A stretch of DNA of 64,000 nucleotides from Glycera tridactyla (GCA_965644265.1 OZ286475.1:31496001-31560000), one strand, 5' to 3'; counted from the first letter of the stretch, positions 1,643-23,316 are shown. Program-made: numbers and translations. The notes: generated by a model from the sequence alone, not told the origin.

Positions 1643-1658
1643 AGTTTTTGTGCGCGTG

Positions 1659-4501
1659 TGTGGTGATAGAGGTGTCTATCACCTTTGTTCTTATAAGCAT
1701 AGGTAGAGTTTTATCTAAATTATGATAAAGCAATGAATCAACAATAGTTGCTTGCTTCAAAAATGTGGTGATAAAAGGGTCCATCACCTAGTTTGATATC
1801 ATTTCTTTCGAGACAGGTTTGATGAAATTTCTCTTAAGACAGGAATGGCTATACATGTGGTTGGAAGTAGGGACAGTATCCAGGCACCCCTAGAGGTAGT
1901 TCACAAATTCTCCAACAGATGTCAATTTAGGTCTTGGTAGAAGCTACTCTGTGTCGAGAGAGGGTGAGAGTGTGAGGGGATGAATGCATATGTATGAGTG
2001 TGAAGGGATAAATGAATATGTATAAGAGGGTGAATTGAGCCAACAAATGAACGTGCATGAAAGTGACCTGTGTAGGAGATGATTGGCTGGTGTATGAGTA
2101 GAGGAACAATGATGGCATGAAAGGCGTGTACATGTGGGAGAGAGTGAATTTTGTCTGAAGGAAGAGAGAGAAAGTTTGAGATTCGACTGGAACATCAACA
2201 GGACAGGACTGCCTGGAAATCTCCCGTGAATTCGGCGCCTGAAGGGGCTCAGAGGTCGAATTCATGTAAAAGGGCAGGATGAGTAGAAAGGATCATCGCA
2301 TTGGGATCATGAAGTGACCACATTCAACATATATATAGATATATCATAAGGATTGGACTATTATCTTGTCTATTTGGATGAAGGTGAGATTATCATGATG
2401 GGATTATTGAGATGTGCATTTTAGCTACAGGTCTGACTAGAGTATAATGATGAAGTGAATTGTATTTTGGACCACAGGTCTGACTAGAGTTTTAATGATG
2501 AGGTGAAGTGTATTTTGGACCACAGGTTTGACTAGAGTTTTAATGATGAGGTGAAGTGTATTTTGGACCACAGATTTGACTGGAATCTTAGTGATGAGTT
2601 GGTGAACATGTATTAGGCATAATGGCTGAAGAATATGATGAATATGCATTGTTGGAAGAATTCTATCACAATGTTTCATCCCTTAGATGGAAGAATATGA
2701 GTTCAGTAGCTTTTGATTCTGACATTTATGCAGCCTGTGATGTCTGTGACAGGTGTATGATACCAAATTCCACAGAGATCAATCGGGAGGATGACTGTGA
2801 ATGTCCCCTCTGTAAGCTGATTGAGCTGTATTGTTGTGAAGTGCTTAAAGAATCCCTGAAAAAGTAGGGTCTCCTCCTTTGTTGTTGGGTGTGCCTTCAA
2901 TTCTGATTATTCCCTTTGTCATATTTGGCTGTGAGCTTTTGAAGGGTTCTTCCTGAATCTGTAATGCTGATATGTTGACTTTGAGTAGTCAGGAAGGTTC
3001 AATTTCCTGGTTTATTGTTCATTCATGAGCTATTCCATATTATGATCACATCTTGGTCATTTCTTCAATATTGAGGTCTCTGAAAATATGACAATGCCTA
3101 AATGAAGGGTATGAAATTGTTGAATTGAAGGACAGCACAATTATCTCGGAGAGAGTTTGATATTCCAGATCCCAATGACATGATCCTAATTCAAGTGTGG
3201 CTATAGTATTGAAAGAGTTAATATTTCATCAGTTTCTTGCAATCTTCAAGTGTCAAACTCAGCTGATTATAAGCAGAACATGACTTTCTTCACTCGATCA
3301 ACCTGGCTTTGCTTTGTGCTACAATATATATATATATATATAATTACTACTAACTTGGTGTTGTTTACTCCTCCTGTGTCTATGGGCACTCTTTACTTGC
3401 ATTCACTCATATTTTCTATAACATAAGAGCGGCGCCGGTGTGAGAGAATGACTCCTTTTCACTGAACATATCACATAAACACATGCCTGCACAGGGTTTA
3501 CATGATTGACCATTTGTGTTGCGCGAGTTTGAGAGCTGATGCTGATCCCAGCTGATATTTGATGCAGCAGGTAATTCTTGACTGATTGTCTAAAGAGGCC
3601 TTGTAGTTGGTCACGAGTTTCATCCAAATTGGATATGGTCCCAGTTGATATTTAAGATATATCAGACTGTGTAATCTCATCCAAGAGAAGAGGATATGGT
3701 CCCAGTTGATATTTAAGATATATCAGACTGCGTAATCTCATCCAAGAGAAGAGGATATTGACCCGGTCGATATTTAATATATATACAACCGTGTATTTTC
3801 ATAAAAGAAACAATTATTCCCCAAAGATCTAAATCCCATGAGACATTTAGTTATAGTTGAACCTGTCCACAATCTCATGTGAAGTTGAATATTAGGTTGA
3901 TATCCCATGAGACATTTAGTTATAGTTGAACCTGTCCACAGTCTCATGTGAAGTTTATTATTGGGTTGGTATCCCATGAGATCTTTAGACGCAGTCAAAC
4001 CTGCCTATAATCTCATATAAAAATAGATATTGAGCTGCTATCCCACGAGTCTTAGAATAGGAAAGTCAAGTCATATTTTGGTGTTTAATGTTGGATTAGT
4101 ATTGAGATTAGGTTATTGAGAGATCCCTAGAACCTGTCATTCAGGTCAGCATAGTCAATTTAAGTCGCAAGCCCTCTCACATTAACCCTTGGGTCCCCAC
4201 TTGGAGTTTAATCCCCATGAGTAGTCTGCAAAAGGTTTGGATCTGGACAACTCATGCTATCCCCCATTTCATCTGGTTGTCCATGATCAACTATAGTCAA
4301 ACCTGTATATCTGTCCACCTAGGTGGATGCATAGAAATACTGTATTAAATGTGGAGAACATTCATGGTACTTGTATAGTACAACCTGTTGCAAGTCAGAG
4401 TATAGTGAAACCAGTCACTTAAGGTGACTCATACTTCAATATAGAGCAGACCTTACGGCTAGTGACCCCGTAGGACCCCGAGGAACCCCCTTATTGCGTC
4501 A
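1659..4501 (+). repeat. 5' LTR (2843 bp)
   Basis: TGTGGTGATA...TTGCGTCA. Matches the 3' copy except for four substitutions found by eye (1743, 2298, 2365, 4328). Contains internal 48-, 61- and 69-bp tandem repeats. Confidence 0.97.
2622..2867 (+). CDS. LTR-encoded 81-aa acidic, Cys-rich putative accessory protein (CxxCxxC / CxCxxC / CC; LxCxE motif)
   Basis: Sense-strand ATG in good context (ATAATGG), protein-like composition, 8 Cys in clusters, and the motif ELYCCEVL. An identical copy lies in the 3' LTR. Confidence 0.45.
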   Translation: MAEEYDEYALLEEFYHNVSSLRWKNMSSVAFDSDIYAACDVCDRCMIPNSTEINREDDCECPLCKLIELYCCEVLKESLKK

Positions 4502-4520
4502 TGGTAGAGAATCCGGGTAT
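4502..4520 (+). promoter_or_regulatory. Primer binding site, probably tRNA-Ala
   Basis: TGGTAGAGAATCCGGGTAT directly follows the LTR CA. It is complementary (about one mismatch) to the 3' end of metazoan tRNA-Ala(AGC)-type sequences (...AUACCCGGAUUCUCCACCA), recalled from memory. Confidence 0.7.
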
Positions 4521-4589: not shown

Positions 4590-6485
4590 ATGCTGCCTGG
4601 AAGACAGGGGAGAAAGAAACAGTTGGAGGATATTTTGAGAGGAGTAGTAGGTACACCAGACACACCAGTCAGAGAGTTTAATTTGGCAGAGGCTAGGAGA
4701 CAGTTTAAAACATTGCTTAAAGAATTTAAGACAAAAGAGAAGGAGAAAGTATCTCTAGCAGAAGACAAGCTGGCGACCTTCAAGGAACCATTATATGATA
4801 GTCATGAAATAGACAGTGATTCATTGTTAGGTGCCACTGGGGGAGACCCCAAACAACCATGTACATCTGATCATGAGGATTTGCTTTCTGGTGGAGAGGA
4901 AGTAGAAGTACCTGAGACAGGTTTACCCACAGGAGAACCAGGGAACCATTCAGATAATCTTTTTAGGAAAGCAAGCATTCAAGCAAATGAACAGATCCAG
5001 TTGTTAGAAAGTGAAATCAGAAAATTAGAGCAAGAAAAGGTAGCATTGAAAGTTAGAAGTGAATATGCATTGAGATATAAGGACAAACAGCAGCACATAG
5101 AGCTCATTGAAATTGAGGGACGTGTGGCAAATAAGATAGATGAATTAGAATACGAGTTTGAGAAGTTGGCTAGAAGACGAGTACAGAGTTTGGCTCAAGC
5201 AAAACAAGAGATTAGGCAGTGTCAGGCCCACTTGCAAGCTTCAGATGATGTAATAGAGGTGGCACAGAGGTTAGATACAGTGTTAAAGGTGTTAGACGAG
5301 GAGGTGGGTGTAGATAATAGGGCTGCAGTACCTGCTTATTTGCTTGAGGATCCAGGATTACAACGAATTGAAGAAAAAGATAGTGAAACTAGTAGTGACC
5401 TTGAGAATAGAGAGGATAGTGTTCTTGGTGAGGATATTGACAATATGGCATATAAAAGGTCACTCAAACCCCCAACCTTCTTTGGTGTTGACTCTGAAGA
5501 TGGGGTGGTATTTCTACAGAGCTTTGAGGATTACATTAGCCTTGAAGGTCCAAGAGAGGATCAAGCAAAAGCCACTTTGTTCAGAATGCTGCAGCAAGGT
5601 TTGGCAGGTTACTGGATTAGATCAATAGATCCAAATAAGGATAAGACATATGATGAGCTGAGGGCTGAGTTTACAGATAGATATATCACCCCATACATTA
5701 CAGGTACCAGGTTAGTGGAAGAGACAAAGATGAGAAACAGGAAATTGAACACTGGGGAGACAGTACAGGACCTTTATACTGATATAGTACTCCAGGGTTC
5801 CAAGATGGGTAAGAGTGACAGGGATATGTTGATGATATTCATAGGTGCCCTCCCTAAAGAATATCAAACTATGGTCATGACATCTGAACCTGATAGTTTG
5901 GTGAAAGCACTGAGAGTAGCACAGTCAGCAGAGTCTTTGTATGGTGAGCATTTCCGAAAAACAGGCAGGACCACCCTGGCTGTCATGACAGAAAAAGAGG
6001 AAAGTAGCTCAGAGCCGATATTGGCATCCTTAAAAGAGATAACCACACGTTTGAACAGAATGGAGCAGAAAAGTAAGTCAGCTCATGTGAAGACCCCAGA
6101 CCTTCAAAAAGCAGTTCAGCCTAGTGAGACCTATGGGAAAGCCCAGTATGATGTCAGACACATAAAGTGTTATAACTGCAACAGATATGGCCATTATGCC
6201 AGTGAGTGTGGAAATCTGAATCCGGACAGACAAATAGTTTGTTGGTATTGTGGAAAGACTGGCCATGTACAACGGGAGTGCTATAGCAGGCAGAGAGATC
6301 AGAGCAGAAGGGGCAGAGGAGATTATAGAGGCCGTGGAGGTTATAGAGGTCGTGGAGGCTATCAAAATTTCAACAGGAGCAACGATTATGGACAACATAG
6401 AGAATACTCAGGCAATAGGCTAGCGATAGAGGCTCCACCGCCATCAAATTATCAATCAAACTATCCATCAAATTCATCAAACTAG
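4590..6485 (+). CDS. gag: Gag polyprotein (631 aa): N-terminal coiled coil, capsid-like domain, two CCHC zinc knuckles, RGG tail
   Basis: LKPPTFFG...FLQSFEDY retrotransposon capsid signature; CYNCNRYGHYASEC and CWYCGKTGHVQREC knuckles; RGRGDYRGRGGYRGRGG. Confidence 0.95.
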   Translation: MLPGRQGRKKQLEDILRGVVGTPDTPVREFNLAEARRQFKTLLKEFKTKEKEKVSLAEDKLATFKEPLYDSHEIDSDSLLGATGGDPKQPCTSDHEDLLSGGEEVEVPETGLPTGEPGNHSDNLFRKASIQANEQIQLLESEIRKLEQEKVALKVRSEYALRYKDKQQHIELIEIEGRVANKIDELEYEFEKLARRRVQSLAQAKQEIRQCQAHLQASDDVIEVAQRLDTVLKVLDEEVGVDNRAAVPAYLLEDPGLQRIEEKDSETSSDLENREDSVLGEDIDNMAYKRSLKPPTFFGVDSEDGVVFLQSFEDYISLEGPREDQAKATLFRMLQQGLAGYWIRSIDPNKDKTYDELRAEFTDRYITPYITGTRLVEETKMRNRKLNTGETVQDLYTDIVLQGSKMGKSDRDMLMIFIGALPKEYQTMVMTSEPDSLVKALRVAQSAESLYGEHFRKTGRTTLAVMTEKEESSSEPILASLKEITTRLNRMEQKSKSAHVKTPDLQKAVQPSETYGKAQYDVRHIKCYNCNRYGHYASECGNLNPDRQIVCWYCGKTGHVQRECYSRQRDQSRRGRGDYRGRGGYRGRGGYQNFNRSNDYGQHREYSGNRLAIEAPPPSNYQSNYPSNSSN

Positions 6486-6526
6486 AGACTGGCACTTCAG
6501 TCAGGGCCCAAATTGGGAGTGTCAGT
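6476..6526 (+). promoter_or_regulatory. Putative -1 ribosomal frameshift signal (A_UCA_AAC + 5-nt spacer + 9-bp stem-loop)
   Basis: The pol frame is -1 to gag and open from 6419. The heptamer ends at the gag stop. ACTGGCACT (6488-6496) pairs with AGTGTCAGT (6518-6526). Confidence 0.6.
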
Positions 6527-6667
6527 AAAATATCAGGGGGGCCAACATGTGGCAAAGAACAGATTACCTCCGCTTGTCCAGAATATTCCCATAACTTCGA
6601 GCATGCATATGATGATTATGAAATAAAGCAAGAACCCGCCTGTGTTGATGGCCTGACAAATAAACAT

Positions 6668-9600
6668 ATGCTGTCCTGTGTTGAACCCCCGAAAAACAAT
6701 TCTGTCTCTGTTGTGCAATGTGCCGAATCGCGAGTTTTTGAGAATGACGTCACACCTGCGGTCACCGGAGAGGTAACAAATTCGTTAGATGAACCCGACA
6801 CACCTGTCCCAGAATATATGGAGAATGAATGTGAGAATGGACAAATAACTGATACAGTTATACCGAAACAAGACTGCGATTATGATATTGTACCAGTATT
6901 CAGAAAGAAAACATTGAATATTCATTTGGGGAGCCTTGATGATCCAGAATATGAAGAACCATTACATATTGAAGCCACTGTAGGGAGGTCTACTATTTGC
7001 AGAGCCATGTTGGATTCAGGGGCTGCTGCTAATTACATGTCTTATAAAGTTTATGAGGCAGTTAGATATTGTGATGAGCTAGTGCAGGAAAATTTTGAGT
7101 CACCCACCTACGGACAGCTTGGTAATGGTACATCTTTTGAAATACTAGGGTATGTTTTATGTGAGATACAGGTCAGAAACCAACAATACTTAGTGGAGTT
7201 TGGGGTGGTAAATGAGCTGACTTCTGAAGTGATATTTGGTATGCCATTCATGAATGAGACTGTTCATAGCATAAATTTTGCTCGTGGTGAGGTGCAGATT
7301 GAACCTTCCAGGGTAGTTAGGGCTGCAAGAAAACTGAAAATGCATTCAGACACACGTCAACCTGTAGAGGGATACATAGGGAGTGACATTCCTGATGACA
7401 CGACAGGAATTTTCACTCCTTCATCTAGTCTGACAGACCATTGGATGGCAATGCCCAATGCTTTGGTGAAGGTACTTCAAGGGGTGATAGTTTGTGAGAT
7501 CATGTATCTTGGTCCCATGGATAATGTCTTACCTGAGGGTGAGATCTTGGGAACATTCCAGCCATTGATGGATGAACATGAGGTTATATATTTGAGGGCC
7601 CCTGCTGAACAGCAAGCCACACCATCTGGTGAGGTATTCCATCCTTCTGTGCTGAATGCCATGAAGGGGGTAAGCAGTTCAAAAGAGATGGGAGATAGAA
7701 TATCCTTGGAGGATCTGAGTGAGAATGATAGGGAATTCATAGAATCCTTTGACTGGAGCAATAGTATCCTTTCTGAGCATGAAAAACAGAGGATATATGT
7801 ACTGTTGCTCAAATACAAGCCGGCCTTTGTGTGTGAGGAATACCCCAAAGTTGGATGTACTGATTTGGTCAGGTATAGGATTGAGTTGAAAGAGGATGCA
7901 AAACCTTTCACAAGTAGACCATATAGATTAGATCCAGAGAAGACGAAGGCATTGAAGGCCCAGTTAGACAGACTTTTGGAAGATGATATCATTGAAGTGG
8001 CACGCAGTGAATATTCCTCACCTGTACTTTTGATTAGGAAACCTGCTGATAAGGTCAAAGGTTGTAGTGATCTGTATTCACAGTATAGATTCACAGTTGA
8101 TTTTCGCTTCTTGAATAAGCAGATAAAAGGTGATGTCTATCACTTACCTGATATAAGAACCCTGCAGGATTCTCTAGGAGCGATGTCCACCCCGAGAATC
8201 ATCTCCAGCTTTGATGCAGATAGGGCATTTTATCAGATCAAACTAGAGAAGGAAAGTCGCCCAGTCACTGCATTTACTACTCCTTTGGGTGATATGCAGT
8301 TCAAGAGGTTACCTATGGGATTGTCAGTAGCCCCCTCAGTTTGGAGCAGACTTATTGGGCTTGTGTTGGCTGGACTGGATCCCTTGCATATTTCTTGCTA
8401 TGTGGATGATATAATAATTGCAACAGAGACAATCGAAGATCATTTAGTAAAGATGGAACAGGTACTGCAGAGATTGAGTGATGCCAGGATCAAATTGAAA
8501 CCTAGTAAAGCTGAAATTGGTGTGGAAAAACTCAAATACCTGGGTTATGAGGTATCTAAGGATGGGATGACCATATCCTTGGATAGAAGACAAGCGATAG
8601 CAAGATTGAAAAGACCTACAACTAGGAAGATGGTCAAAAGCCAGTTAGGCATGTTCGGCTTTTTCAGGAGATTTGTCTCAAAATTTTCACAGATTGCTAG
8701 ACCCTTATATGAGTTAACAAAGGAGAGTGTCAAATTTGAATGGGATGAGACGGCTGAGGAGGCATGGCAGACTTTGAAGGATAAGCTATTGAACCCACCT
8801 GTACTGGCCTATCCTGTAATAGGCTGGCTCTATCGGTTACACACAGATGCCTGTTATGAAGGTACTAGCTATATGTTGACCCAGGTGATGCCTGAAGAGG
8901 AGTGGCATAATAGAAACCCAAATGCCACTAAAAACCCCACTATTCGTGATAGGGAACATCCTGTGCTTTATGGATCAGGTTCATTACATGGGTATCAGAA
9001 GAACTATACAGTAACTGAGTTAGAGATGTTGGCGGTGATTAGAGGAGTTGAGTGCAATGAATACTATCTGCGTCCACCTGTTGAGTTTGAGATGGTGACT
9101 GATCACAGTGCTTTGACCTATATGTTCAATATGAAAGTCCCACCTCCGAGAATAGCTAGATGGGTTGCATATTTGCAGAACTTTAATTTCAAAGTGGTGC
9201 ATGTGCCTGGAAGAGAGAATGTAGTTCCGGATGTACTGTCCAGAATGACCAATACAGATGAGAGAACTCAGAGTCCAGCATTGGAGGACCCATGTTTCCC
9301 ATATGAACAAGAAGTTGTGGGTAGAAACAATGTTCCAAAGTTGAATACCCTAATTAATATGATGTCCGTAGATCAAGAAGAGAGGGAACCAGTGAGACTT
9401 AAGTCAGAGATGTTCATGCAAATATCACCTGTTGAGATAGCTGAGTTGAATACATTGGAGACACTGACAGTAGATCAGAAAAAGAGGGAACCAGTGAGGT
9501 ATAGGTCAGAGATGTTTATGCAAATATTTCCTGTTGAGACTGCTGAGGGTGAACTGGACAATGGTGATGTTAGCTTGAGTAAGGACATTCTGTTGGCACC

Positions 9601-12640: not shown

Positions 12641-12900
12641 AGTGAAGATAGGTGAGAAAATAGATAAGAAATGTGAAACAAGTGAAGATAGGTGAGAAAA
12701 TAGATAAGAAATGTGAAACAAGTGAAGATAGGTGAGAAAATAGATAAGAAATGTGAAACAAGTGAAGATAGGTGAGAAAATAGATAAGACATGTGAGACA
12801 AGTGAAGATAAGTGAGAAAATAGAGAAGGCATGTGAGACAAGTGAAGATAAGTGAGTAAAAAGAGAAGATGAGTAGGACCAGTGAAGATAAGCAAGAATA
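12641..12900. repeat. Purine-rich 40-bp tandem array inside the LTR element
   Basis: AGTGAAGATAGGTGAGAAAATAGATAAGAAATGTGAAACA repeated with period 40 (starts 12641, 12681, 12721, 12761, 12801, then degenerate copies). Confidence 0.9.
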
Positions 12901-13299
12901 GTGGAGATAAGTGAAGATAGTGAAGAGAATATTGAAGATAAGAGAGAATGAAGAAAAGAAGTAAGAACAATGAAGAAAAGTGAGAATGGTCAAAAGTGAG
13001 AAGAGACATATGAGGAAAGTGAGATGAGACATGTGAGACAAGTCAGAAAAGACATGGGAGACTAGTGAGAATTATGAGAAATTATGTTATTTACAACACA
13101 ACAAACAGGTTATAGCAGACATTGCACTGGCAGGTGGTTTCCAATCTCCATGGATTGTTGAATGGTTGAATACTTGTGCATGATATTCCGAAATTGAATT
13201 CCAGGGTTGTCAACTGGAATAGAATTAATCTTGATAGGCTAGTCACTTCATAAGGTCAGAGGGAATGAACAGGAAGGGGTTCACCCAGAAGGGGGTGAA

Positions 13300-13665
13300 A
13301 TGGAATCGAGATGGTGCCCAGACAGAGGTCAAGAGTCAGGTTTAATGGTTGAGCAGGGTGTGTGCTTGCCAGATATGAGGGTGAGTTACCCTTTCTTTAG
13401 GCATCTGGTAGCTGGAGACATCGGATTTTTTTTATGGACTGAGGTGTTCTTGGTGGGATTATTACTGCTACTACTACTACTACTACTACTACTGAGACTA
13501 TCATTATTGCTACTACTACTACTACTACTACACCTATTACTGCTACTGCTGTTGATACTGCTGCTGCTATTACTACTATTGTCACCAGTGGGGATATTAT
13601 TCTTCTTATATTTCTTATATATCCATTTTAATCGGATTAGGTTACATGATGCAGAAACAGGATGA
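13300..13665 (+). CDS. Possible 121-aa poly-leucine membrane protein
   Basis: ATG-initiated ORF with 37 Leu in 41 codons (13459-13581). Most departures from CTA are synonymous Leu codons. Overlaps the start of the next ORF. Confidence 0.35.
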   Translation: MESRWCPDRGQESGLMVEQGVCLPDMRVSYPFFRHLVAGDIGFFLWTEVFLVGLLLLLLLLLLLLRLSLLLLLLLLLHLLLLLLLILLLLLLLLSPVGILFFLYFLYIHFNRIRLHDAETG

Positions 13666-14350
13666 CAAGGTAGGGCCCCGCATTGCCATATATGTGGCTA
13701 ATGATTACAAAATGAAACTCTTAACCACATACTTTAAACAGGTGGAACAGAGGAGGGCAACCCCAACAGATTTGGCCGAATGGTTGCAACCTGTACCAGA
13801 GATGATGGGAGGTAAATGCTGTAGGGATAGACATGACATGTTATACATGGTGACTGTGGAGAGAATTGAGGAAATGTACCAAAAAATAGATAATTTTGTG
13901 AAAGATATAGAAATTGTTCATGGGGAACTGGGAAGTCTGACTCTCCTGATTGATGTAGGAGATAGTGAAGTTGAAGAGTTAACGATGGCAAACAAAGATA
14001 TGGCATTCAAAATAGCCGATGAACTACTCCAGGATTGTTTATGTCTGTACTACGGAATGGCAGACAAGGTTTGTATTGTGGGCGGAGGGCCCAGTAGAAC
14101 TGAGAATGCTCAGGTGGAGTCGAGGAATATGGCCAACTTTAATGCGAGATTAGAATGGTCACTTGGCCAGCTACAGATGGATAAGATAGTGTTCAATCCA
14201 GTGAGGCCATTGTGGGAGAAGCATGAAAGTGAGCCATGGGAATGGACCGACGATGGCCGAACACTTTCGCTCAAAAAGTCTTTTTGGATATACAATCCGG
14301 CCTATGAGTATTTCAAATTGGTCCTGCAAATGTTGCTGAATGGGAACTAA
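13646..14350 (+). CDS. Accessory ORF (234 aa), SGNH/GDSL hydrolase-like fold with degenerate catalytic residues
   Basis: Motif order matches SGNH blocks: RIAIYVAND (block I GDS position), LTLLIDVGDSE (block III GxND), KVCIVGGGPSR, ANFNARL, IVFNPVRPLW, WTDDGRTLS (block V DGxH with H>T). Intact sense ORF between pol and env. Confidence 0.65.
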   Translation: MMQKQDDKVGPRIAIYVANDYKMKLLTTYFKQVEQRRATPTDLAEWLQPVPEMMGGKCCRDRHDMLYMVTVERIEEMYQKIDNFVKDIEIVHGELGSLTLLIDVGDSEVEELTMANKDMAFKIADELLQDCLCLYYGMADKVCIVGGGPSRTENAQVESRNMANFNARLEWSLGQLQMDKIVFNPVRPLWEKHESEPWEWTDDGRTLSLKKSFWIYNPAYEYFKLVLQMLLNGN

Positions 14351-16517
14351 GGATGGGTACAGGTCCCTTTTGAGTCAGACATCTTACAACATTATAGCTT
14401 GCATGCATAATTATTAGTAAATTTTGAATTTTTCCTTTGTGCTGGGCACATTTCACTATTGTGTCATGCACAATTCACTATTCTGTCATGTACATTTCAC
14501 AATTGCCTAGAGCATCTTTCACTATTGTGTCATGCACATTTCTCTACTGTGGTATCGAATTGTGCAAACTCCAACATTGCAGTTGTCGCTGTTGAATAAT
14601 CTACAGCAGATTTTGTTTGGAGGTTTGTGTTCTGATTTTGTAGTTGCATCCAGGGGGTAGTGGGGTGACAAACACATCGATATATCAAAGGACAAGATTT
14701 TCTGAGTACCACATAAAAACAAAATAACAATGAATAATGGGATGGTAGTGAAGCAAAACATGGTGACCTGAAATGTGGAATGAACTGGGAATGGTTAGAA
14801 CAATTTACAACAACATCTTAGAAAAAAAGAAGAAGAGCATAGTGCCAAGTAAGACACGATGACATGCCACAAAACAGATGAACCACTCTTGTAGCCCCAT
14901 GTAAATTTGTTCATAAAACAATTCACAGTTCATTTTCTTTACTTGCAAATTTATTACAATGACTTTATTTGACAGCAGCATGACTTGAGACACTGGAACA
15001 ATGATGAACTGGATCATAGATATGGTATTAATGATGTGTTGCTTTGGGCTGAATATGGACTGCAGTCGTATTATGCATGTATGTTTTATAAATTGATTGA
15101 TTAATGCATGTTAGTTAAGTTTTGAGATAGGATGACCCGATATGAGCTGACAGATTGCTATTGGAACATGGATAGTTGAATATACTGGTTCCCATCTGAA
15201 TGTGAGTGCAGATGGACTATTTGCATGAAGAATATGAGGTTTGGTACCCTACCTTAGATTGGATGGGTTGAGATGTAAAGGAACTGCATGATACTATCAT
15301 GTTTGATATACCAGTGGCCCATTTGGAAGTAAGTGTCAATTGGGCTATTGACTGCCATGATAGCATGAACCAAGTAGATTCATTGAATTTTACAACAGCA
15401 GTGGTATGCATGAATATATGATATTCGCTGTTGTTCATTGTCTTGTGTTTTTGGTTTGTGGGGGTGGTGCCTGCAAGGGAGAAACAATCTATGTCATCAC
15501 ACTTCCACAGATCTCACAAGAAAGTCTACCCTTGGTAGGTTTGGATGAAGGAGTCAGAGGGTCATTGCATGGAAACACATATAGTCAAGGGTGAGTTAAG
15601 GAACAAGTTGCATGAGTTGCATGGAAGTATATACGCGCTAATATATATCTGTCCCGCTGCATTATAGACCTTGGTGGTGGATGTGAATGAAGCCTGAATA
15701 GAACACCAATCATCTAATAGTGAAGCATTTTGAAGTTCTATTTGCATGCATTCTGAGCAGAGGGGTGAGTCCTGCTCAGTAATGGTTTGTGCATGGTCTA
15801 TGATTATGAAGTAAGGTCATTTTGATTGTATACAGCACTGAGTATCCATAAATGTTCACATATACTTCACAATTAATTGGTTAAATTTGGTGATGATTCA
15901 ATTGATTCCGGGTTGATAGCATTTTATGGAGTAGTTTGGCTGCCTGACAGGGCTAGTGAACCTGGAAAGATGTGTGGGGTTCCCAGTTGGATACAGAACC
16001 AATTGGAATGTGGTGTCCCACATATGCTATTCTTGTTGCGCAGAAGACAAAAGAAAAAAAAAGTTTCATATGAATCATTGGGGTGTGCCAGCTACCCCCT
16101 AGATGGCACAAGGGTATGGTTGACTCCTGAAACTTAATCCAGTAGAGGGGGCTGTTCAGACTATTGTAATGTAACATTGATTTTATCCATTAGAGGGGTT
16201 GTTAGAAGGCTTTGATGAGCACACTATGACAGTTGAAGTGGGATTCTGATTAAAGGACTTGATATTTTATTGATTAATTTGCATTTGATATATGAGTTTT
16301 GTTATAAATGGTAAGATTTACAGATGCTGAACCTGAAGAGAAAGAAACCGCGGTGGGTAAGCTATGGTGTGCCATTGGTGCACTGGTTAACTACATAAAA
16401 CATTTAGGTACGTATGGGTATTGTAAGTGCGCATTCTTCCTGCTGGCGTGAGCTTATAAGTTGAAACTTTGTAATCACTCCTGCCAAATCTTTGGTAATC
16501 AAGGGCATGAGAAGATC

Positions 16518-19295
16518 ATGGCTTGCCATATTGGACTTTGGCAGTGTCTGCTGTTCTCGGCCTTACTTGTGGCCATCAATGGTCGTGGCAATCGACAGGA
16601 TGATGCAAATCGACAAGAATTCCGGAAATTCTATCCCAATCTTGGAGTTACTGTTGTCAAGCTGGGACAGATGTCTCTGACTGATAATCACTGGATACAC
16701 ACTTATCGGATGCGGCCTTTGTCCTTCAGGAATAATCTGAATCAATATCTGGCGCGATTTGAATGTGATAATCGATCAAATAGTACCTACCGTGTTCGTG
16801 CCAATCTTGGCTACCTGTGTGTTTGGCTTAACAGTTTGAAAGCTTCTGACCGCCATCATGAGGCTACATTACGGCGACGTTTGGACGGTTTAAGACGTGA
16901 TATTAATCATATGGTACCGGCAGTGTCCAATCCGAGTCAATGGGCCCGACAGTATGCGAAAAGAGACAGACGATTCCTTGGTGCGTTGACGAGCATAGCC
17001 TCGATTGCACTCAGTGCATTTGATTCCTATGAGAAGTATGTCATGAAACAACATATATCCGGTTTGATGAGAGACATTCGACAGGTAGCCAAAGTGAACC
17101 ATAGACTTGCGGCTCAGTTTGGTAGTTTTGTTAATATTTCTGAAATTCGGTGGACCACTGTTCACGATGCTTTGGAAAGACATTATGATACTTTAGTAAG
17201 CTTACATGATGAGGTTAATCAATCAAGGACAGATATTGTGGAATTACGAAAGCTCATCCAAGCTGTTGTCATATTCATTAAAGCAGTGCATTTGAATGAT
17301 GCGATTCATTCCAGGCGGTATGCCATTGTTGATAGACAAATATCAATCAGGAGGCATGCCATACAAAGACTTCTTAATGGCTATTTGGACACGAATTTGA
17401 TCCGTCCTGAAACGTTGAAAACTTCGTTGGACAATATCCAACACCACCTTTCCGGTATGGGTTTGGGGGTGGTCTTGGCCTTTAGTCACTTGGACTATTA
17501 TTACAGATCAAGGATTGTACATGTGTCAAGGCATGGTGATGACTTGATGGTACATTTGGTGATTCCCCTTTCATCTTTTGAAGGGATGTTTGACCTGTAT
17601 CATTTCTCCGGTATTCCTTTACCGATTGACCAGTCTGAAAAAACAAATGCATCCACCATGATTTCAAATCTTACGCCATATTTGGCTCTTTCTGACTATC
17701 ATTTTATGGAAATTTCAAGAGGGGAGATGGATCTGTGTACTGAAACTACGAATTTATATCAGTGTGAGATTTCCGTACCTATGAGTGAGGGCATAGAAAG
17801 CTGTGCTTTATCCATTTATCGGGAAGATACGAGACGTATCAGGTCTCTCTGTGAGTTTGAAGTACATCCCTACATGGAGGATGATGATATTATTCAGGAA
17901 ATAATACCAGGTCGATATTTGATCTCTACTTTCCCACAGACTTGGGTGAAGCGATGTTATAATAAGCAACGTACATATACTGACACTGATATTGTGAGCT
18001 GTCGGCTGTGTATAGTGAATGTAGACTGTGGGTGTATCTTGCAAACTTGGAAATTTGTCATTGTCTCTTCAGTAGACAGCTGTTACACATTTCATGATAC
18101 TGAAGTTTTGTCCAACGATCCACATGATTTGAGGGGAGGAATTGCACAAAATTGGGCATATCTTTATTTAGCAGATCCTGGGGATGATTCAAATTTGACC
18201 CTGCAGTCAATTTCAAGTGTTCCTTTTGATGCCCAGTTAGAGAAGTTGAAGATATTTCATGATGAGAATATGTCCAATCTGAAGGTGAAATTTGATATCT
18301 CTGATGTCAGGGATGCTCTGGAGTCTGATATGGTGATTGGTACTCCAGATGTCATAATTCTACAGAACTGGGTGAATGACATAATAATGCCTGTATCATT
18401 GGGTGTTGGTGTGGTAGGACTGATGTGTGTGGCAATACTGTGGTGTGTATTCTGTAAGGCTGGACTTAAGTATAGAGCCCTGCTAGTTAAAGCAGGATTG
18501 GTTTCTAAGATTCCTGAGGTCGTAGCATCCTCAGGAAAGGGTGACATTTCTAATACATTACATAAGGTATATATGATTGGATGCAGTATGCTTGTGATTG
18601 GACTGGCTGCATTTATTGGTTATCTGTTCTACAAGATGTACCAGTATTGTATCCGATATCCCCATAATTCGGGTATTTCAGCCAGACTTGCTGCGATTGT
18701 TTTAAGGCGTAATACCACAGAGATTAATTTGGAAGTGTATACCAAGTCCCGGTATATGAGCATCAATTTGCTTATGTTGCCAATTGAACCAATTAGACTT
18801 CGAGTACTGTATGATCCTCTGCATTTGAATTTGAGTGTAGTACAGAAATTATGCTTTCCGGTAATGATTCTTGAATTTGAGGATCGACCTATAATTGTGA
18901 TTGACGATGAACCAACTGTGTTCACTTTGCCCACGACTGTGAATCTGACCATGTCACAAGGTAGCGCATTACGACAAATGCTGGGTGACGTTGAAGTCGT
19001 GTACAGATTGATGGTTTCTAGTGGGACAAGTGTCCATAAAGAATGTGTGGTCTTCAAGATAAAAGATGCGACTCTTGATCGCAGAAACAGGCAGAGGATC
19101 ATGCATCGTATGTTGAAGAGGGTAGCTGCTACCTATCATGATAGTGACTTCCATACTCCATCTGCATTGCAGCAAGATGATGATGAGGATTCTGATTTGA
19201 CTCATAGTTGTGATGTTCGTGGTGCATGTGGTGTGCGTGGAGAAGATGGTGTGAGAGATCCAAGAATAGGGGCTGTAGCTACAACACAATTGTGA
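16518..19295 (+). CDS. env: Envelope / class I viral fusion glycoprotein (baculovirus-F/errantivirus-like architecture) with second TM and long C-terminal extension
   Basis: Signal peptide from ATG 16518 (MACHIGLWQCLLFSALLVAING); GQMSLTDNHWIHTY N-terminal motif; furin site KRDRR (to 16973) followed by fusion peptide FLGALTSIASIALSAF; heptad repeat; NGYLDTNLIRPETL motif; Cys-rich region; N-glycosylation sequons; TM at 18381-18455 and 18567-18632. Confidence 0.9.
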   Translation: MACHIGLWQCLLFSALLVAINGRGNRQDDANRQEFRKFYPNLGVTVVKLGQMSLTDNHWIHTYRMRPLSFRNNLNQYLARFECDNRSNSTYRVRANLGYLCVWLNSLKASDRHHEATLRRRLDGLRRDINHMVPAVSNPSQWARQYAKRDRRFLGALTSIASIALSAFDSYEKYVMKQHISGLMRDIRQVAKVNHRLAAQFGSFVNISEIRWTTVHDALERHYDTLVSLHDEVNQSRTDIVELRKLIQAVVIFIKAVHLNDAIHSRRYAIVDRQISIRRHAIQRLLNGYLDTNLIRPETLKTSLDNIQHHLSGMGLGVVLAFSHLDYYYRSRIVHVSRHGDDLMVHLVIPLSSFEGMFDLYHFSGIPLPIDQSEKTNASTMISNLTPYLALSDYHFMEISRGEMDLCTETTNLYQCEISVPMSEGIESCALSIYREDTRRIRSLCEFEVHPYMEDDDIIQEIIPGRYLISTFPQTWVKRCYNKQRTYTDTDIVSCRLCIVNVDCGCILQTWKFVIVSSVDSCYTFHDTEVLSNDPHDLRGGIAQNWAYLYLADPGDDSNLTLQSISSVPFDAQLEKLKIFHDENMSNLKVKFDISDVRDALESDMVIGTPDVIILQNWVNDIIMPVSLGVGVVGLMCVAILWCVFCKAGLKYRALLVKAGLVSKIPEVVASSGKGDISNTLHKVYMIGCSMLVIGLAAFIGYLFYKMYQYCIRYPHNSGISARLAAIVLRRNTTEINLEVYTKSRYMSINLLMLPIEPIRLRVLYDPLHLNLSVVQKLCFPVMILEFEDRPIIVIDDEPTVFTLPTTVNLTMSQGSALRQMLGDVEVVYRLMVSSGTSVHKECVVFKIKDATLDRRNRQRIMHRMLKRVAATYHDSDFHTPSALQQDDDEDSDLTHSCDVRGACGVRGEDGVRDPRIGAVATTQL

Positions 19296-20473
19296 ATATC
19301 AAACTGTCCAGATTATCTTTATGTTGCAGAACCTGTGTAATTGTAACTGCCCCACCTAGTGAGTTGCTGCCCTATGCTATCTCTAATTCTTCAACCTGGA
19401 GCCGGAGTTGATGTTTCGTGATGAGCGGATTCGCCTTTTTGCTGAGCTTCGTCGAGATATGCCATTGTTGATGATGAACTGATCCACGTGATGTGTTTGT
19501 ACTGCACGTCGCGTCCTTTACTTACCTCCTTGAGTACTTGATGCTGGAGATATTCTGGTGCACAGGAGTTGTCGTGGCGACATGGAATGATGTTTGATCC
19601 CTGGATTGACTTGCTGGTTATGGCCGGAAGATTGACTTTCGTATTCTTGACACTTGGCTATGGTCAGATGCATATTGATGATGGTTGCCAGATCATTTGC
19701 CAGTACAGTGTTTGTGAAGCATTCGTCAGGAATGATTTGGACAAAATATCCATTTGCCTTCTCTTACAAGGCATCCGGTGTTTGAGGTGATTGCGTGAGA
19801 CAGCAGACATCCTATTCATTTCAAGGATCACAGTATGTGCGCAAGAGGCAGATGATATATTTGCCATGGATTCTTCTCGTTGGCCGGACTGACTGTGTCC
19901 GGGTTGGTGTTCTTTCGTGACATTCGAACATTTGATGAGTTTCCCCACAGGAATGCAAAAATGACTTATTCTGTGCGGAACTAGAGAGTTGATGATGAGG
20001 AGACCGATTCCTGATATGCACATTCTGTATGATTGGTGATCCACGGTGATGAGTCAACATGGCATATGAACTGATCCGGATACGTTCGTCGTTGGACAAG
20101 AGATCCAGTTTTCAAGAGGTGCAGCAATGAGATAGCATGAACTTTCAGATATTCAAATCATACTAGGGCCTAGAGGACATTTAACAATATGATGATATTT
20201 TAGCAACCTTTGGTGGGCAGAGGATTTTTTTTTCAGGTACCCTGATGTTATTGATAATACACAACATATACATATATATCAACATTTTAATATAATGGTG
20301 AGAGTTATCAACTACATGTATAGTTTTGGCTCACATTTTGGCTGTGTCGCCTGAATTAGTGGTTATTTGATCACATTTCTAAATGTGACCCAGATGACGA
20401 TGATAAATGATTTTCCAATTCATGATAAAGCAACGACTCAACTATTGAGGACAATAGTTGCTTGTGTCATGCA

Positions 20474-23316
20474 TGTGGTGATAGAGGTGTCTATCACCTT
20501 TGTTCTTATAAGCATAGGTAGAGTTTTATCTAAATTATGATAAAGCAATGAATCAACTATAGTTGCTTGCTTCAAAAATGTGGTGATAAAAGGGTCCATC
20601 ACCTAGTTTGATATCATTTCTTTCGAGACAGGTTTGATGAAATTTCTCTTAAGACAGGAATGGCTATACATGTGGTTGGAAGTAGGGACAGTATCCAGGC
20701 ACCCCTAGAGGTAGTTCACAAATTCTCCAACAGATGTCAATTTAGGTCTTGGTAGAAGCTACTCTGTGTCGAGAGAGGGTGAGAGTGTGAGGGGATGAAT
20801 GCATATGTATGAGTGTGAAGGGATAAATGAATATGTATAAGAGGGTGAATTGAGCCAACAAATGAACGTGCATGAAAGTGACCTGTGTAGGAGATGATTG
20901 GCTGGTGTATGAGTAGAGGAACAATGATGGCATGAAAGGCGTGTACATGTGGGAGAGAGTGAATTTTGTCTGAAGGAAGAGAGAGAAAGTTTGAGATTCG
21001 ACTGGAACATCAACAGGACAGGACTGCCTGGAAATCTCCCGTGAATTCGGCGCCTGAAGGGGCTCAGAGGTCGAATTCATGTAAAAGGGCAGGATGAGTA
21101 GAAAGGATCATCACATTGGGATCATGAAGTGACCACATTCAACATATATATAGATATATCATAAGGATTGGACTATTATTTTGTCTATTTGGATGAAGGT
21201 GAGATTATCATGATGGGATTATTGAGATGTGCATTTTAGCTACAGGTCTGACTAGAGTATAATGATGAAGTGAATTGTATTTTGGACCACAGGTCTGACT
21301 AGAGTTTTAATGATGAGGTGAAGTGTATTTTGGACCACAGGTTTGACTAGAGTTTTAATGATGAGGTGAAGTGTATTTTGGACCACAGATTTGACTGGAA
21401 TCTTAGTGATGAGTTGGTGAACATGTATTAGGCATAATGGCTGAAGAATATGATGAATATGCATTGTTGGAAGAATTCTATCACAATGTTTCATCCCTTA
21501 GATGGAAGAATATGAGTTCAGTAGCTTTTGATTCTGACATTTATGCAGCCTGTGATGTCTGTGACAGGTGTATGATACCAAATTCCACAGAGATCAATCG
21601 GGAGGATGACTGTGAATGTCCCCTCTGTAAGCTGATTGAGCTGTATTGTTGTGAAGTGCTTAAAGAATCCCTGAAAAAGTAGGGTCTCCTCCTTTGTTGT
21701 TGGGTGTGCCTTCAATTCTGATTATTCCCTTTGTCATATTTGGCTGTGAGCTTTTGAAGGGTTCTTCCTGAATCTGTAATGCTGATATGTTGACTTTGAG
21801 TAGTCAGGAAGGTTCAATTTCCTGGTTTATTGTTCATTCATGAGCTATTCCATATTATGATCACATCTTGGTCATTTCTTCAATATTGAGGTCTCTGAAA
21901 ATATGACAATGCCTAAATGAAGGGTATGAAATTGTTGAATTGAAGGACAGCACAATTATCTCGGAGAGAGTTTGATATTCCAGATCCCAATGACATGATC
22001 CTAATTCAAGTGTGGCTATAGTATTGAAAGAGTTAATATTTCATCAGTTTCTTGCAATCTTCAAGTGTCAAACTCAGCTGATTATAAGCAGAACATGACT
22101 TTCTTCACTCGATCAACCTGGCTTTGCTTTGTGCTACAATATATATATATATATATAATTACTACTAACTTGGTGTTGTTTACTCCTCCTGTGTCTATGG
22201 GCACTCTTTACTTGCATTCACTCATATTTTCTATAACATAAGAGCGGCGCCGGTGTGAGAGAATGACTCCTTTTCACTGAACATATCACATAAACACATG
22301 CCTGCACAGGGTTTACATGATTGACCATTTGTGTTGCGCGAGTTTGAGAGCTGATGCTGATCCCAGCTGATATTTGATGCAGCAGGTAATTCTTGACTGA
22401 TTGTCTAAAGAGGCCTTGTAGTTGGTCACGAGTTTCATCCAAATTGGATATGGTCCCAGTTGATATTTAAGATATATCAGACTGTGTAATCTCATCCAAG
22501 AGAAGAGGATATGGTCCCAGTTGATATTTAAGATATATCAGACTGCGTAATCTCATCCAAGAGAAGAGGATATTGACCCGGTCGATATTTAATATATATA
22601 CAACCGTGTATTTTCATAAAAGAAACAATTATTCCCCAAAGATCTAAATCCCATGAGACATTTAGTTATAGTTGAACCTGTCCACAATCTCATGTGAAGT
22701 TGAATATTAGGTTGATATCCCATGAGACATTTAGTTATAGTTGAACCTGTCCACAGTCTCATGTGAAGTTTATTATTGGGTTGGTATCCCATGAGATCTT
22801 TAGACGCAGTCAAACCTGCCTATAATCTCATATAAAAATAGATATTGAGCTGCTATCCCACGAGTCTTAGAATAGGAAAGTCAAGTCATATTTTGGTGTT
22901 TAATGTTGGATTAGTATTGAGATTAGGTTATTGAGAGATCCCTAGAACCTGTCATTCAGGTCAGCATAGTCAATTTAAGTCGCAAGCCCTCTCACATTAA
23001 CCCTTGGGTCCCCACTTGGAGTTTAATCCCCATGAGTAGTCTGCAAAAGGTTTGGATCTGGACAACTCATGCTATCCCCCATTTCATCTGGTTGTCCATG
23101 ATCAACTATAGTCAAACCTGTATATCTGTCCACCTAGGTGGAAGCATAGAAATACTGTATTAAATGTGGAGAACATTCATGGTACTTGTATAGTACAACC
23201 TGTTGCAAGTCAGAGTATAGTGAAACCAGTCACTTAAGGTGACTCATACTTCAATATAGAGCAGACCTTACGGCTAGTGACCCCGTAGGACCCCGAGGAA
23301 CCCCCTTATTGCGTCA
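20474..23316 (+). repeat. 3' LTR (2843 bp)
   Basis: Copy of 1659-4501; ends GCGTCA followed by the TSD GCGTG. Confidence 0.97.
21437..21682 (+). CDS. 3' LTR copy of the 81-aa Cys-rich LxCxE ORF
   Basis: Identical translation to 2622-2867. In this position it could be included in element transcripts. Confidence 0.45.
   Translation: MAEEYDEYALLEEFYHNVSSLRWKNMSSVAFDSDIYAACDVCDRCMIPNSTEINREDDCECPLCKLIELYCCEVLKESLKK

What the first reader, a model, noticed from the sequence alone, without database searches (positions are those of the whole stretch)
1659..23316. Intact 21.7-kb retrovirus-like Ty3/Gypsy element combining a chromodomain integrase, a fusion env and several accessory genes
Seen: 2843-bp near-identical LTRs, GCGTG TSD, PBS, unbroken gag/pol/env, and extra ORFs between pol and env and inside the LTR. 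Known: typical Ty3/Gypsy elements are 5-10 kb with short LTRs, and accessory genes are a feature of complex retroviruses and a few giant invertebrate elements. Inference: this is a recently active, possibly infectious, complex retrovirus-like lineage of an invertebrate with its own accessory gene set (SGNH-fold, poly-Leu, LxCxE/Cys-rich, pseudo-dUTPase). It is the best candidate for an undescribed system in this window.
Basis: partly seen in the sequence, partly recalled or inferred. Interest (0 to 1): 0.92.

Follow-up and report, generated by a model that had tools for sequence, protein, structure and literature searches.

The report
Intact giant env-carrying Ty3/gypsy retroelement
This is a real, recently inserted, unbroken 21.7-kb retrovirus-like Ty3/gypsy element with a paramyxovirus/baculovirus F-type envelope gene and a chromodomain integrase. 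That kind of element is already described in invertebrates, and most of the claimed accessory genes do not hold up.

Summary
There are two 2843-bp LTRs (4 differences, TG..CA), a 5-bp GCGTG target-site duplication, a TGG primer-binding site directly after the 5' LTR, and open gag, pol and env.

- **Pol:** Ty3-like, in the order PR-RT-RNaseH-IN, with a borderline but consistent C-terminal chromodomain.
- **Env:** an F-type class I fusion protein. The model matches pneumovirus and paramyxovirus F with Foldseek probability 1.0. Of 45 aligned family members, 14 hit Pfam Baculo_F. The arginine that ends the furin-type site is conserved in at least 90% of relatives.
- **Kind:** env-carrying Ty3/gypsy elements, including a chromodomain clade in Cnidaria, Mollusca and Annelida, were published by Chary & Hayashi (eLife 2026). 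The kind is therefore known.
- **What is unusual:** the size. The LTRs are long and repeat-rich, and a 4.9-kb pol-env spacer is mostly non-coding. That survey's filters would have missed such an element.
- **Accessory genes:** only the orphan 234-aa ORF looks coding. The poly-Leu "gene" is an (ACT)n microsatellite. The Cys-rich LTR ORF is of a length chance would give. No SGNH or dUTPase signal was found.
- **Best lead:** Env and most of its relatives examined carry a second hydrophobic helix and a conserved C-terminal beta domain whose predicted fold weakly resembles bornavirus matrix proteins.

The parts
1654..1658 (+). Left copy of the 5-bp target-site duplication (GCGTG)
1659..4501 (+). 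5' LTR, 2843 bp, TG..CA. It holds tandem-repeat blocks at 2427-2598 (48 bp x3.6), 3631-3784 (61 bp x2.5) and 3833-4016 (69 bp x2.7), and an 81-aa Cys-rich ORF at 2622-2867 that is probably chance.
4502..4520 (+). Primer-binding site, starting TGG directly after the LTR. The same motif with 1 mismatch lies upstream of gag in L001 and L004. The tRNA was not identified.
4590..6485 (+). gag, 631 aa: weak Ty3-capsid-like region and two CCHC zinc knuckles
6419..11593 (+). pol frame (first ATG 6668; 1641 aa from there), -1 relative to gag and overlapping it over 6419-6485. Domains: PR about 6998-7255; conserved linker of unknown fold 7256-7867; RT about 7868-8575; RNase H about 8741-9259; bridge of unknown fold 9260-10160; IN zinc domain 10163-10336; IN core 10397-10846.
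11429..11548 (+). Chromodomain at the C-terminus of pol (pol aa about 1588-1627)
   Evidence: Pfam Chromo E 1.5e-4, 22.1 bits, below the curated cut-off of 25.1. The PDB top hits are all chromodomains, E from 4e-3. The region is conserved in the closest pol, P0152.
11594..16517 (+). pol-env spacer, 4.9 kb, mostly non-coding. It holds tandem repeats (11888-11997, 12633-12869, 14446-14551) and an (ACT)n microsatellite at 13463-13547 that creates the 'poly-Leu' ORF 13300-13665.
13646..14350 (+). Orphan ORF, 234 aa (264 codons stop to stop). Its codon usage resembles the element's own genes. It has no homolog, no Pfam family and no known function.
16518..19295 (+). env, 925 aa, an F-type class I fusion glycoprotein. 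Features: signal peptide (about 16518-16583); furin-type site RDRR (16962-16973); hydrophobic fusion peptide (about 16974-17042); long helices and a Cys-rich head; first membrane helix (about 18381-18452); second hydrophobic helix (about 18567-18635).
18705..19067 (+). Conserved C-terminal beta-rich domain of Env (aa about 730-850), with a matrix-protein-like predicted fold (weak evidence)
19296..20473 (+). Non-coding stretch between env and the 3' LTR, with no clear polypurine tract at the LTR edge
20474..23316 (+). 3' LTR, 2843 bp, 4 differences from the 5' LTR
23317..23321 (+). Right copy of the target-site duplication (GCGTG)

Best explanation
This is a structurally intact, recently integrated LTR retroelement of the Ty3/gypsy group (Metaviridae). 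It belongs to the env-carrying, chromodomain-bearing kind now known from several invertebrate phyla.

Shown by the sequence: identical-length LTRs with a target-site duplication, a primer-binding site, gag with two zinc knuckles, and pol (PR-RT-RNaseH-IN-chromodomain) in the -1 frame.

Shown by homology and fold: env is an F-type class I fusion glycoprotein with a signal peptide, a furin-type site followed by a fusion peptide, a long helical stalk and a Cys-rich head.

Inferred life cycle:
- The full-length RNA is translated to Gag and, by a -1 shift, Gag-Pol.
- Env comes from a subgenomic, probably spliced, RNA.
- The chromodomain steers integration towards marked chromatin.
- Env would let particles enter neighbouring cells, as shown for insect gypsy.

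The large size comes mainly from non-coding sequence: 5.7 kb of repeat-rich LTRs, a 4.9-kb pol-env spacer and 1.2 kb after env. It does not come from a set of accessory genes, and at most one orphan 234-aa ORF is likely to be translated.

The Env tail (second hydrophobic helix plus a conserved beta domain) is shared by most of the relatives I aligned. I infer that it is an assembly or matrix-like module linking Env to the membrane or capsid.
For: - **LTRs, TSD, PBS:**
- **Open gag, pol, env and the -1 overlap:**
- **Pol domains:** Pfam. The best solved relative is Ty3 Gag-Pol 7q5b, E 8e-80.
- **Chromodomain:**
- **Env family:** 914 relatives at E<=1e-3 among 1.84 billion representatives. Of 45 aligned members, 14 hit Pfam Baculo_F, best E 3e-15. 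The family profile hits PDB 9w4d 'fusion protein' at 2.9e-17.
- **Env fold:** AF2 model, pLDDT 76.6. Its top Foldseek hits are RSV, hMPV and PIV3 F, E 2e-10, probability 1.0. R152 (end of RDRR), G166 and ten cysteines between positions 407 and 522 (twelve in all) are at least 90% conserved.
- **Spacer belongs to the element:** uniform GC content and positive GC skew across all 21.7 kb, falling to about 0 outside it.
- **ORF tests:** ORF234 scores 0.117 on codon usage, against 0.023-0.219 for held-out chunks of the element's genes and -0.11 to -0.38 for 11 antisense ORFs. The poly-Leu ORF scores -0.18.
- **Env tail:** two hydrophobic helices plus the C-terminal domain occur in most of the 72 aligned relatives. 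The domain model has pLDDT 82.8. It gives repeated hits to bornavirus M (probability 0.8-0.99, TM 0.41-0.48) and to chuvirus glycoproteins (probability 0.9-0.99).
- **The kind is published:** PMC13524379.
Against: - No canonical slippery heptamer was seen in the gag/pol overlap, and the downstream RNA fold is no better than shuffles.
- There is no obvious polypurine tract at the 3' LTR edge.
- The chromodomain scores below Pfam's curated cut-off.
- The window's own Env does not reach Baculo_F in Pfam, so membership rests on fold and on relatives.
- Foldseek E-values for the tail domain are weak (1e-2 to 1e-1), and there is no sequence-level match.
- With two membrane helices the tail would lie on the outer side, which does not fit a matrix-like role. 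The topology is unresolved.
- There are no other copies, no transcripts and no host identity, so activity is inferred only from intactness and 0.14% LTR divergence.
Confidence: 0.85

Rival explanations
1. One reading: a complex retrovirus-like lineage whose extra length encodes its own accessory gene set (SGNH-fold, poly-Leu, LxCxE/Cys-rich, pseudo-dUTPase).
For: - ORF234 is long (264 codons stop to stop) and has element-like codon usage.
- Relatives L001 and L002 carry 463-aa and 557-aa ORFs upstream of env.
- A dUTPase-like domain between PR and RT is known in other gypsy-like elements (PMC6431247). The PR-RT linker here is conserved among relatives.
Against: - No SGNH or dUTPase hit, even at E<=10, for single sequences or a 3-sequence profile.
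- The poly-Leu ORF is a microsatellite.
- The LTR ORF length is what chance gives (and my estimate).
- The spacer ORFs of the window, L001 and L002 share no similarity with each other.
- ORF234 has no relative among 5.8 billion proteins.
Confidence: 0.1
2. The pol-env spacer is functional RNA or regulatory sequence (an intron of the env mRNA, export or packaging elements, internal enhancer repeats), or the decayed remnant of a once larger accessory ORF like those in L001 and L002.
For: - Long stretches upstream of env without pol are also seen in relatives: at least 4.6 kb in L001 and at least 7.6 kb in L002.
- The spacer contains tandem repeats.
- Its strand composition matches the rest of the element.
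Against: There is no sequence conservation between the spacers and no Rfam family in the window. The gene order in L001 and L002 cannot be fixed from single contigs.
Confidence: 0.3
3. Assembly chimera: two different elements, or an element plus unrelated DNA, joined by mis-assembly across repeats.
For: The window contains N gaps elsewhere (28037-28527, 33935-34386), and the element is unusually long.
Against: There are no Ns inside the element. The LTR bounds are exact and flanked by a perfect 5-bp duplication. Composition and GC skew are uniform. The gag, pol, env and PBS are all related to the same lineage, L001.
Confidence: 0.03

Closest known systems
Env-carrying Ty3/gypsy elements of non-insect metazoans ('ancient errantiviruses'), especially the chromodomain-bearing clade from Cnidaria, Mollusca and Annelida (Chary & Hayashi, eLife 2026, PMC13524379)
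   Same: LTR-gag-pol-env-LTR order. F-type Env with a conserved furin site, fusion peptide and structured ectodomain. A chromodomain after the integrase. A young, intact copy.
   Different: - The pol-env gap is 4.9 kb; that survey accepted at most 1-3 kb.
- The LTRs are 18.8 kb apart start to start; that survey dropped pairs more than 14 kb apart.
- The LTRs are 2.8 kb each and the total length is 21.7 kb.
- The paper describes only the ectodomain, not the second hydrophobic helix and C-terminal domain seen here.
- Phylogenetic placement in their tree was not tested.
Insect errantiviruses (gypsy, ZAM, Idefix, 17.6) with a baculovirus-F-like Env
   Same: The same overall design and the same class of fusion protein. 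For these elements Env-mediated cell-to-cell infection is established (literature cited in PMC13524379 and PMC12992720).
   Different: By my own recollection, untested here, they are about 7-9 kb with LTRs of a few hundred bp, have no chromodomain and have a much shorter Env tail. Env identity to the Pfam Baculo_F model is too low for a direct hit.
Chromoviruses (chromodomain-containing Ty3/gypsy such as Tf1, Maggy, Sushi, CRM)
   Same: A Ty3-like pol with a C-terminal chromodomain.
   Different: Classical chromoviruses lack env and are 5-10 kb.
Giant gypsy-like elements (plant Ogre, planarian Burro; PMC6431247)
   Same: The size is over 20 kb. As in Ogre, long LTRs and extra internal sequence carrying ORFs of unknown function account for much of the length.
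   Different: Burro's length is a huge multi-domain polyprotein with env in frame between gag and pol. Here the excess is mostly non-coding. No relation beyond Ty3/gypsy membership was shown.
Paramyxovirus and pneumovirus F, and baculovirus F (Pfam PF12259)
   Same: The predicted fold (Foldseek probability 1.0), the cleavage site followed by a fusion peptide, and the heptad helices.
   Different: About 10% identity to the solved F proteins. Env here has a roughly 300-residue extension after the first membrane helix, including a conserved beta domain.

Membership tests
Ty3/gypsy (Metaviridae) LTR retroelement | Direct LTRs ending TG..CA, flanked by a short target-site duplication | tested here: met
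   2843-bp LTRs, 4 differences, 5-bp GCGTG duplication
Ty3/gypsy (Metaviridae) LTR retroelement | pol domain order PR-RT-RNaseH-IN, with integrase after RT | tested here: met
   Pfam positions along the 1641-aa pol. The best PDB match is Ty3 Gag-Pol, E 8e-80.
Ty3/gypsy (Metaviridae) LTR retroelement | PBS next to the 5' LTR and PPT next to the 3' LTR | tested here: inconclusive
   A TGG-initiated PBS is present and conserved in L001 and L004. No clear purine tract abuts the 3' LTR. The tRNA was not identified.
Ty3/gypsy (Metaviridae) LTR retroelement | RT/IN phylogenetic placement inside the group | not tested
Only similarity ranking was done.
Chromodomain-containing Ty3/gypsy (chromoviruses in the broad sense) | Chromodomain C-terminal to the integrase | tested here: met
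   Borderline. Pfam Chromo E 1.5e-4 but 22.1 bits against a cut-off of 25.1. The PDB top hits are exclusively chromodomains (CDY, MPP8, Clr4, HP1), E from 4e-3. The motif is conserved in P0152.
Env-carrying Ty3/gypsy ('errantiviruses' in the sense of Chary & Hayashi) | gag, pol and a viral-fusogen env between one pair of LTRs | tested here: met
Env-carrying Ty3/gypsy ('errantiviruses' in the sense of Chary & Hayashi) | Compact layout used to recognise them: pol-env gap of at most 1-3 kb and LTRs at most 14 kb apart | tested here: not met
   The gap is 4.9 kb and the LTRs are 18.8 kb apart. This is a search filter, not a biological definition.
F-type class I viral fusion glycoproteins (baculovirus F / paramyxovirus F) | Signal peptide, and a basic cleavage site directly followed by a hydrophobic fusion peptide and heptad helices | tested here: met
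   The sequence reads RDRR then FLGALTSIASIALSAF. R152 and G166 are at least 90% conserved in 72 relatives. Long helices are present in the model.
F-type class I viral fusion glycoproteins (baculovirus F / paramyxovirus F) | F-protein fold | tested here: met
   Foldseek against PDB: RSV, hMPV and PIV3 F fill the top 50, best E 2e-10, probability 1.0, TM 0.3-0.4 on the target.
F-type class I viral fusion glycoproteins (baculovirus F / paramyxovirus F) | Direct match to Pfam Baculo_F (PF12259) | tested here: not met
   The window's Env has no Pfam hit. 14 of 45 aligned relatives do hit, best E 3.2e-15, so the link is transitive.
Mononegavirus matrix (M) fold, for the Env C-terminal domain | Structural match to solved or predicted M proteins | tested here: inconclusive
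   Borna disease virus M (4hi6, 4hi5): probability 0.77-0.85, TM 0.41-0.45, E about 0.1. Predicted bornavirus M proteins: probability 0.98-0.99, TM 0.46-0.48, E 0.03-0.09. No sequence-level match.
dUTPase (claimed 'pseudo-dUTPase') | Match to the trimeric dUTPase family | tested here: not met
   No PF00692 hit and no PDB dUTPase hit at E<=10, for the PR-RT linker alone or as a 3-sequence profile.
SGNH/GDSL hydrolase (claimed 'SGNH-fold') | Match to the SGNH family, or a GDS(L) block | tested here: not met
   No Pfam hit in any ORF and no GDS[LIVMF] motif in any element ORF.
Complex retrovirus-like element with accessory genes | Extra ORFs conserved among copies or relatives | tested here: inconclusive
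   No other copy was available. The ORFs upstream of env in L001 and L002 are unrelated to the window's spacer and to each other. ORF234 has coding-like codon usage but no homolog.

The most novel reading that the evidence does not exclude
The Env of this element, and most of the relatives I aligned from a family of 914 representative proteins, is a fusion of an F-type fusogen with a C-terminal module of mononegavirus-matrix-like fold. A similar fold also occurs somewhere in chuvirus glycoproteins. This would be an undescribed 'fusogen plus built-in matrix' design that could explain how gypsy-like capsids recruit an envelope. Together with the shared PBS, the long LTRs and the multi-kilobase pol-env spacer, it would mark a distinct lineage of large env-carrying chromodomain elements that current surveys filter out.
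Probability: 0.3. Interest if true: 0.7.

Novelty: new member of a known kind. Interest (0 to 1): 0.4.

Why it matters
A complete, very young copy is a clean reference for a little-sampled lineage of env-carrying, chromodomain-bearing Ty3/gypsy elements. It also shows that size and gap filters in published surveys can hide large members.

The practical value lies in annotation. The element should be masked and classified as a single 21.7-kb unit, and its ORFs should not be called host genes.

The conserved Env tail domain is the one feature that could change how envelope acquisition and particle assembly in these elements are understood. It needs structural and topological confirmation first.

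Tried and rejected
**Env, direct searches.** The window's Env gave no hit in Pfam or in the PDB sequence search. The word-indexed protein search found only one relative. The exhaustive search was needed to reach the family.

**ORF234.** No homolog and no Pfam family.

**Exact-sequence look-up.** The gag, pol, env and small-ORF proteins are not in the collection, so the source genome and other copies could not be reached.

**dUTPase and SGNH.** All negative: Pfam at E<=1 and E<=10, PDB phmmer, and a 3-sequence profile against PDB.

**Window-wide scans.** Rfam and tRNA scans found nothing.

**Other copies in the window.** Blastn and tblastx of the element against the rest of the window found none.

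**Spacer comparisons.** Spacer-to-spacer and accessory-ORF comparisons with L001 and L002 found nothing. A search for nested-element signatures in the spacer found no inverted repeats.

**Frameshift signal.** No canonical heptamer was seen by eye, and the downstream fold has z = +0.69.

**Literature.** A search for PDB 9w4d and for the assembly accessions of L001, L002 and L004 found nothing useful. The supplements of PMC13524379 are not held.

**Tail-domain topology.** Cysteine, sequon and charge statistics were uninformative. A C-domain profile against PDB and Pfam gave nothing.

**Host organism.** It could not be determined.

- The alignment tool printed consensus lines by itself.
- I fetched four assembly contigs (L001-L004) by look-up of proteins that my own searches returned. 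They carry endogenous relatives of this element, not named viruses.
- I fetched no chuvirus, bornavirus or paramyxovirus sequence.
- In my reasoning I began to recall a tRNA 3' end from memory in order to name the PBS.

Full report
**1. Observation**

The repeat finder and a direct comparison show two 2843-bp direct repeats at 1659-4501 and 20474-23316. They differ at 4 ungapped positions (0.14%). Identity stops exactly at those bounds, and each repeat begins TG and ends CA.

The five bases GCGTG flank both ends. The base after the 5' LTR starts TGGTAGAGAATCCGGGTAT, a primer-binding-site-like motif.

Between the LTRs the + strand carries three long open frames:
- 4590-6485, 631 aa.
- A frame open from 6419 to 11593, with its first ATG at 6668 (1641 aa from there).
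- 16518-19295, 925 aa.

There are no Ns inside the element and no other copy or solo LTR in the window. The described features are real and far beyond chance.

**2. gag and pol**

Gag has two CCHC knuckles and a weak Ty3-capsid-like stretch.

The pol frame is -1 relative to gag and overlaps it by 67 nt. I saw no canonical slippery heptamer, and the downstream RNA folds no better than shuffles. The frameshift is therefore inferred from the layout only.

Pfam places the pol domains in this order: aspartic protease (weak), RVT_1, RT_RNaseH, Integrase_H2C2, rve and Chromo. The active-site motifs DSG and YxDD are present. The best solved relative is the Ty3 Gag-Pol polyprotein (7q5b, E 8e-80), followed by other Ty3, caulimovirus and retroviral RTs and by foamy-virus integrase.

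The chromodomain is borderline. It scores 22.1 bits against Pfam's cut-off of 25.1, E 1.5e-4 on the C-terminal fragment. However, the PDB hits of the last 72 residues are exclusively chromodomains (CDY, MPP8, Clr4, HP1). The motif is also conserved in the closest pol, P0152, which is 44% and 33% identical over its two halves and collinear to the end.

Two stretches of pol have no family assignment: aa about 197-400 between PR and RT, and aa about 860-1150 between RNase H and IN. The first is conserved in relatives. It gives no dUTPase signal by Pfam, PDB search or a small profile. The second gives nothing either.

**3. env**

The protein starts with a signal-peptide-like segment. RDRR is directly followed by a hydrophobic stretch (FLGALTSIASIALSAF). 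There are 11 N-glycosylation sequons, 23 cysteines and two hydrophobic helices near residues 622-645 and 684-706.

Neither Pfam nor the PDB sequence search recognises it directly, and the word-indexed search found one relative. The exhaustive search of 1.84 billion representatives found 914 relatives at E<=1e-3, of which 246 are at E<=1e-10; the 150 listed are mostly about 780-900 aa.

Several lines place it among F-type class I fusion proteins:
- In a 72-sequence alignment, R152 (the last residue of RDRR), G166 and twelve cysteines are at least 90% conserved.
- Of 45 aligned members, 14 match Pfam Baculo_F, best E 3.2e-15.
- The family profile hits the PDB 'fusion protein' 9w4d at 2.9e-17.
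- The AlphaFold model (pLDDT 76.6) matches pneumovirus and paramyxovirus F proteins throughout the top 50 Foldseek hits, best E 2e-10, probability 1.0.

This is the same class as the Env of insect gypsy and of the 'F-type' elements in PMC13524379.

**4. The Env tail**

Beyond the first membrane helix, Env continues for about 300 residues. There is a basic loop, a second hydrophobic helix and a beta-rich domain (aa about 730-850) modelled at pLDDT about 94.

Most of the 72 aligned relatives have both hydrophobic segments and fill the columns of this domain. It is therefore common in this Env family and not an oddity of this copy.

A separate model of the domain (pLDDT 82.8) has no strong structural neighbour. 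The recurring hits are:
- Solved Borna disease virus matrix protein: probability 0.77-0.85, TM 0.41-0.45.
- Predicted bornavirus M proteins: probability 0.98-0.99, TM 0.46-0.48.
- San Jacinto virus M.
- An unspecified part of several chuvirus glycoproteins of 1000-1230 aa: probability 0.9-0.99.

The E-values are only 1e-2 to 1e-1, and there is no sequence-level match. I read this as a probable matrix-like beta fold, with about 0.3 confidence that it reflects true relatedness and function.

Topology is a problem. Two membrane passes would put the domain on the outer side. Composition statistics did not settle this. PMC13524379 analyses ectodomains only and does not mention this tail.

**5. The extra ORFs**

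- **Poly-Leu ORF, 13300-13665.** It runs through an (ACT)n/(GCT)n microsatellite read in the CTA/CTG frame. Its codon-usage score is negative, like antisense ORFs. It is not a gene.
- **ORF 13646-14350, 234 aa.** It is 264 codons stop to stop, too long for chance at this base composition (my estimate). Its codon-usage score is 0.117. Held-out chunks of gag, pol and env score 0.023-0.219, and all 11 antisense control ORFs score -0.11 to -0.38. It is probably coding or was so recently. It has no Pfam family and no relative.
- **LTR ORF, 81 aa.** It has 8 Cys and one LxCxE. At 89 codons stop to stop, about one such ORF is expected by chance in a 2.8-kb LTR read in six frames (my estimate), and similar ORFs lie on the other strand.
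- **SGNH.** No such signal exists anywhere in the element.

The rest of the 4.9-kb spacer and the 1.2 kb after env show no coding signal. They share the GC content and the positive GC skew of the whole element, while the flanks have a skew near 0. The spacer has no inverted repeats or internal LTR pairs. It therefore looks like native element sequence and not a nested insertion.

**6. Relatives**

- **L001.** This is an ENA metagenome contig. It carries an Env 29% identical, then an LTR end (..CA), then the same PBS with one mismatch, then gag and pol (RT 64% identical). At least 4.6 kb upstream of its env lacks pol and holds an unrelated 463-aa ORF.
- **L002.** This is a contig of NCBI assembly GCA_029979705.1. 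It has an Env relative (BLAST pieces 23-43% identical) preceded by about 7.6 kb without recognisable pol, including an unrelated 557-aa ORF.
- **L004.** This is a contig of GCA_029980205.1. It holds the closest gag-pol, has the same PBS variant upstream of gag, and shows no env in the 1.6 kb after pol.

These loci define a lineage with a shared primer site, a chromodomain pol and this Env. They suggest, but do not prove, that long stretches upstream of env are typical for it. The extra ORFs are not conserved across these distant relatives.

**7. Comparison with what is known**

Chary & Hayashi (PMC13524379) report 1512 env-carrying Ty3/gypsy elements across metazoan phyla, with F-type or gB-type Env. 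They include a clade from Cnidaria, Mollusca and Annelida that carries a chromodomain.

Their pipeline accepted only pol-env gaps of up to 1-3 kb, regions of up to 10 kb, and LTR pairs at most 14 kb apart. An element like this one, with a 4.9-kb gap and LTRs 18.8 kb apart, would have been missed.

Large gypsy-like elements such as Ogre and Burro, and the capture of extra ORFs between pol and env, are also documented (PMC6431247; PMC5408684).

**8. Verdict**

This is an intact, young member of a known kind with an inflated, mostly non-coding architecture.

With 4 LTR differences in 2843 bp, and assuming 1-5e-9 substitutions per site per year (an assumption, since the host is unknown), the insertion would be roughly 0.1-0.7 million years old.

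The host phylum, activity and infectivity were not testable. The assemblies of the relatives could not be named.

Noticed in passing
window 40600-46600, - strand: A long satellite with a roughly 63-bp (21-codon) unit that stays open in several overlapping frames. It gives spurious ORFs of 180-440 aa (for example 42766-44091) and has no Pfam family.
   Followed up: partly
window 52300-53500 and 57490-61380, - strand: A run of collinear ORFs of 190-426 aa without Pfam families. Next to it are two overlapping ORFs with weak hits to Phage_int_SAM_1 (E 0.019) and Dam-like methyltransferase (E 0.062). Tyrosine recombinase plus methyltransferase is the combination seen in DIRS-like retroelements, so this may be a second, unrelated mobile element.
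   Followed up: partly
window 31647-32933, + strand, next to the N gaps at 33935-34386: An ORF with a weak match to the end of the RVT_1 model (E 0.027). It may be a fragment of another reverse-transcriptase-bearing element beside an assembly gap. The Ns were left untouched.
   Followed up: no
window 27062-27468: A 45-bp tandem repeat, 9 copies, 95% matches, just downstream of the element. It creates a 169-aa ORF.
   Followed up: no
window 1466-1642: An (ACG)n microsatellite of about 59 units directly upstream of the insertion site. The element sits 16 bp from its end.
   Followed up: no
L001 1304-2695 and L002 276-1949: Relatives of the element carry sizeable ORFs (463 and 557 aa) upstream of env. 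They have no Pfam family and no similarity to each other or to the window's spacer. L004 has an unusually long gag (1142 aa).
   Followed up: partly
window 4502-4520; L001 9468-9483; L004 2464-2479: The window copy's primer-binding site differs by one base (A for G at its fifth position) from the motif shared by the two relatives. This may reflect a host tRNA variant or a mismatch with the primer.
   Followed up: partly
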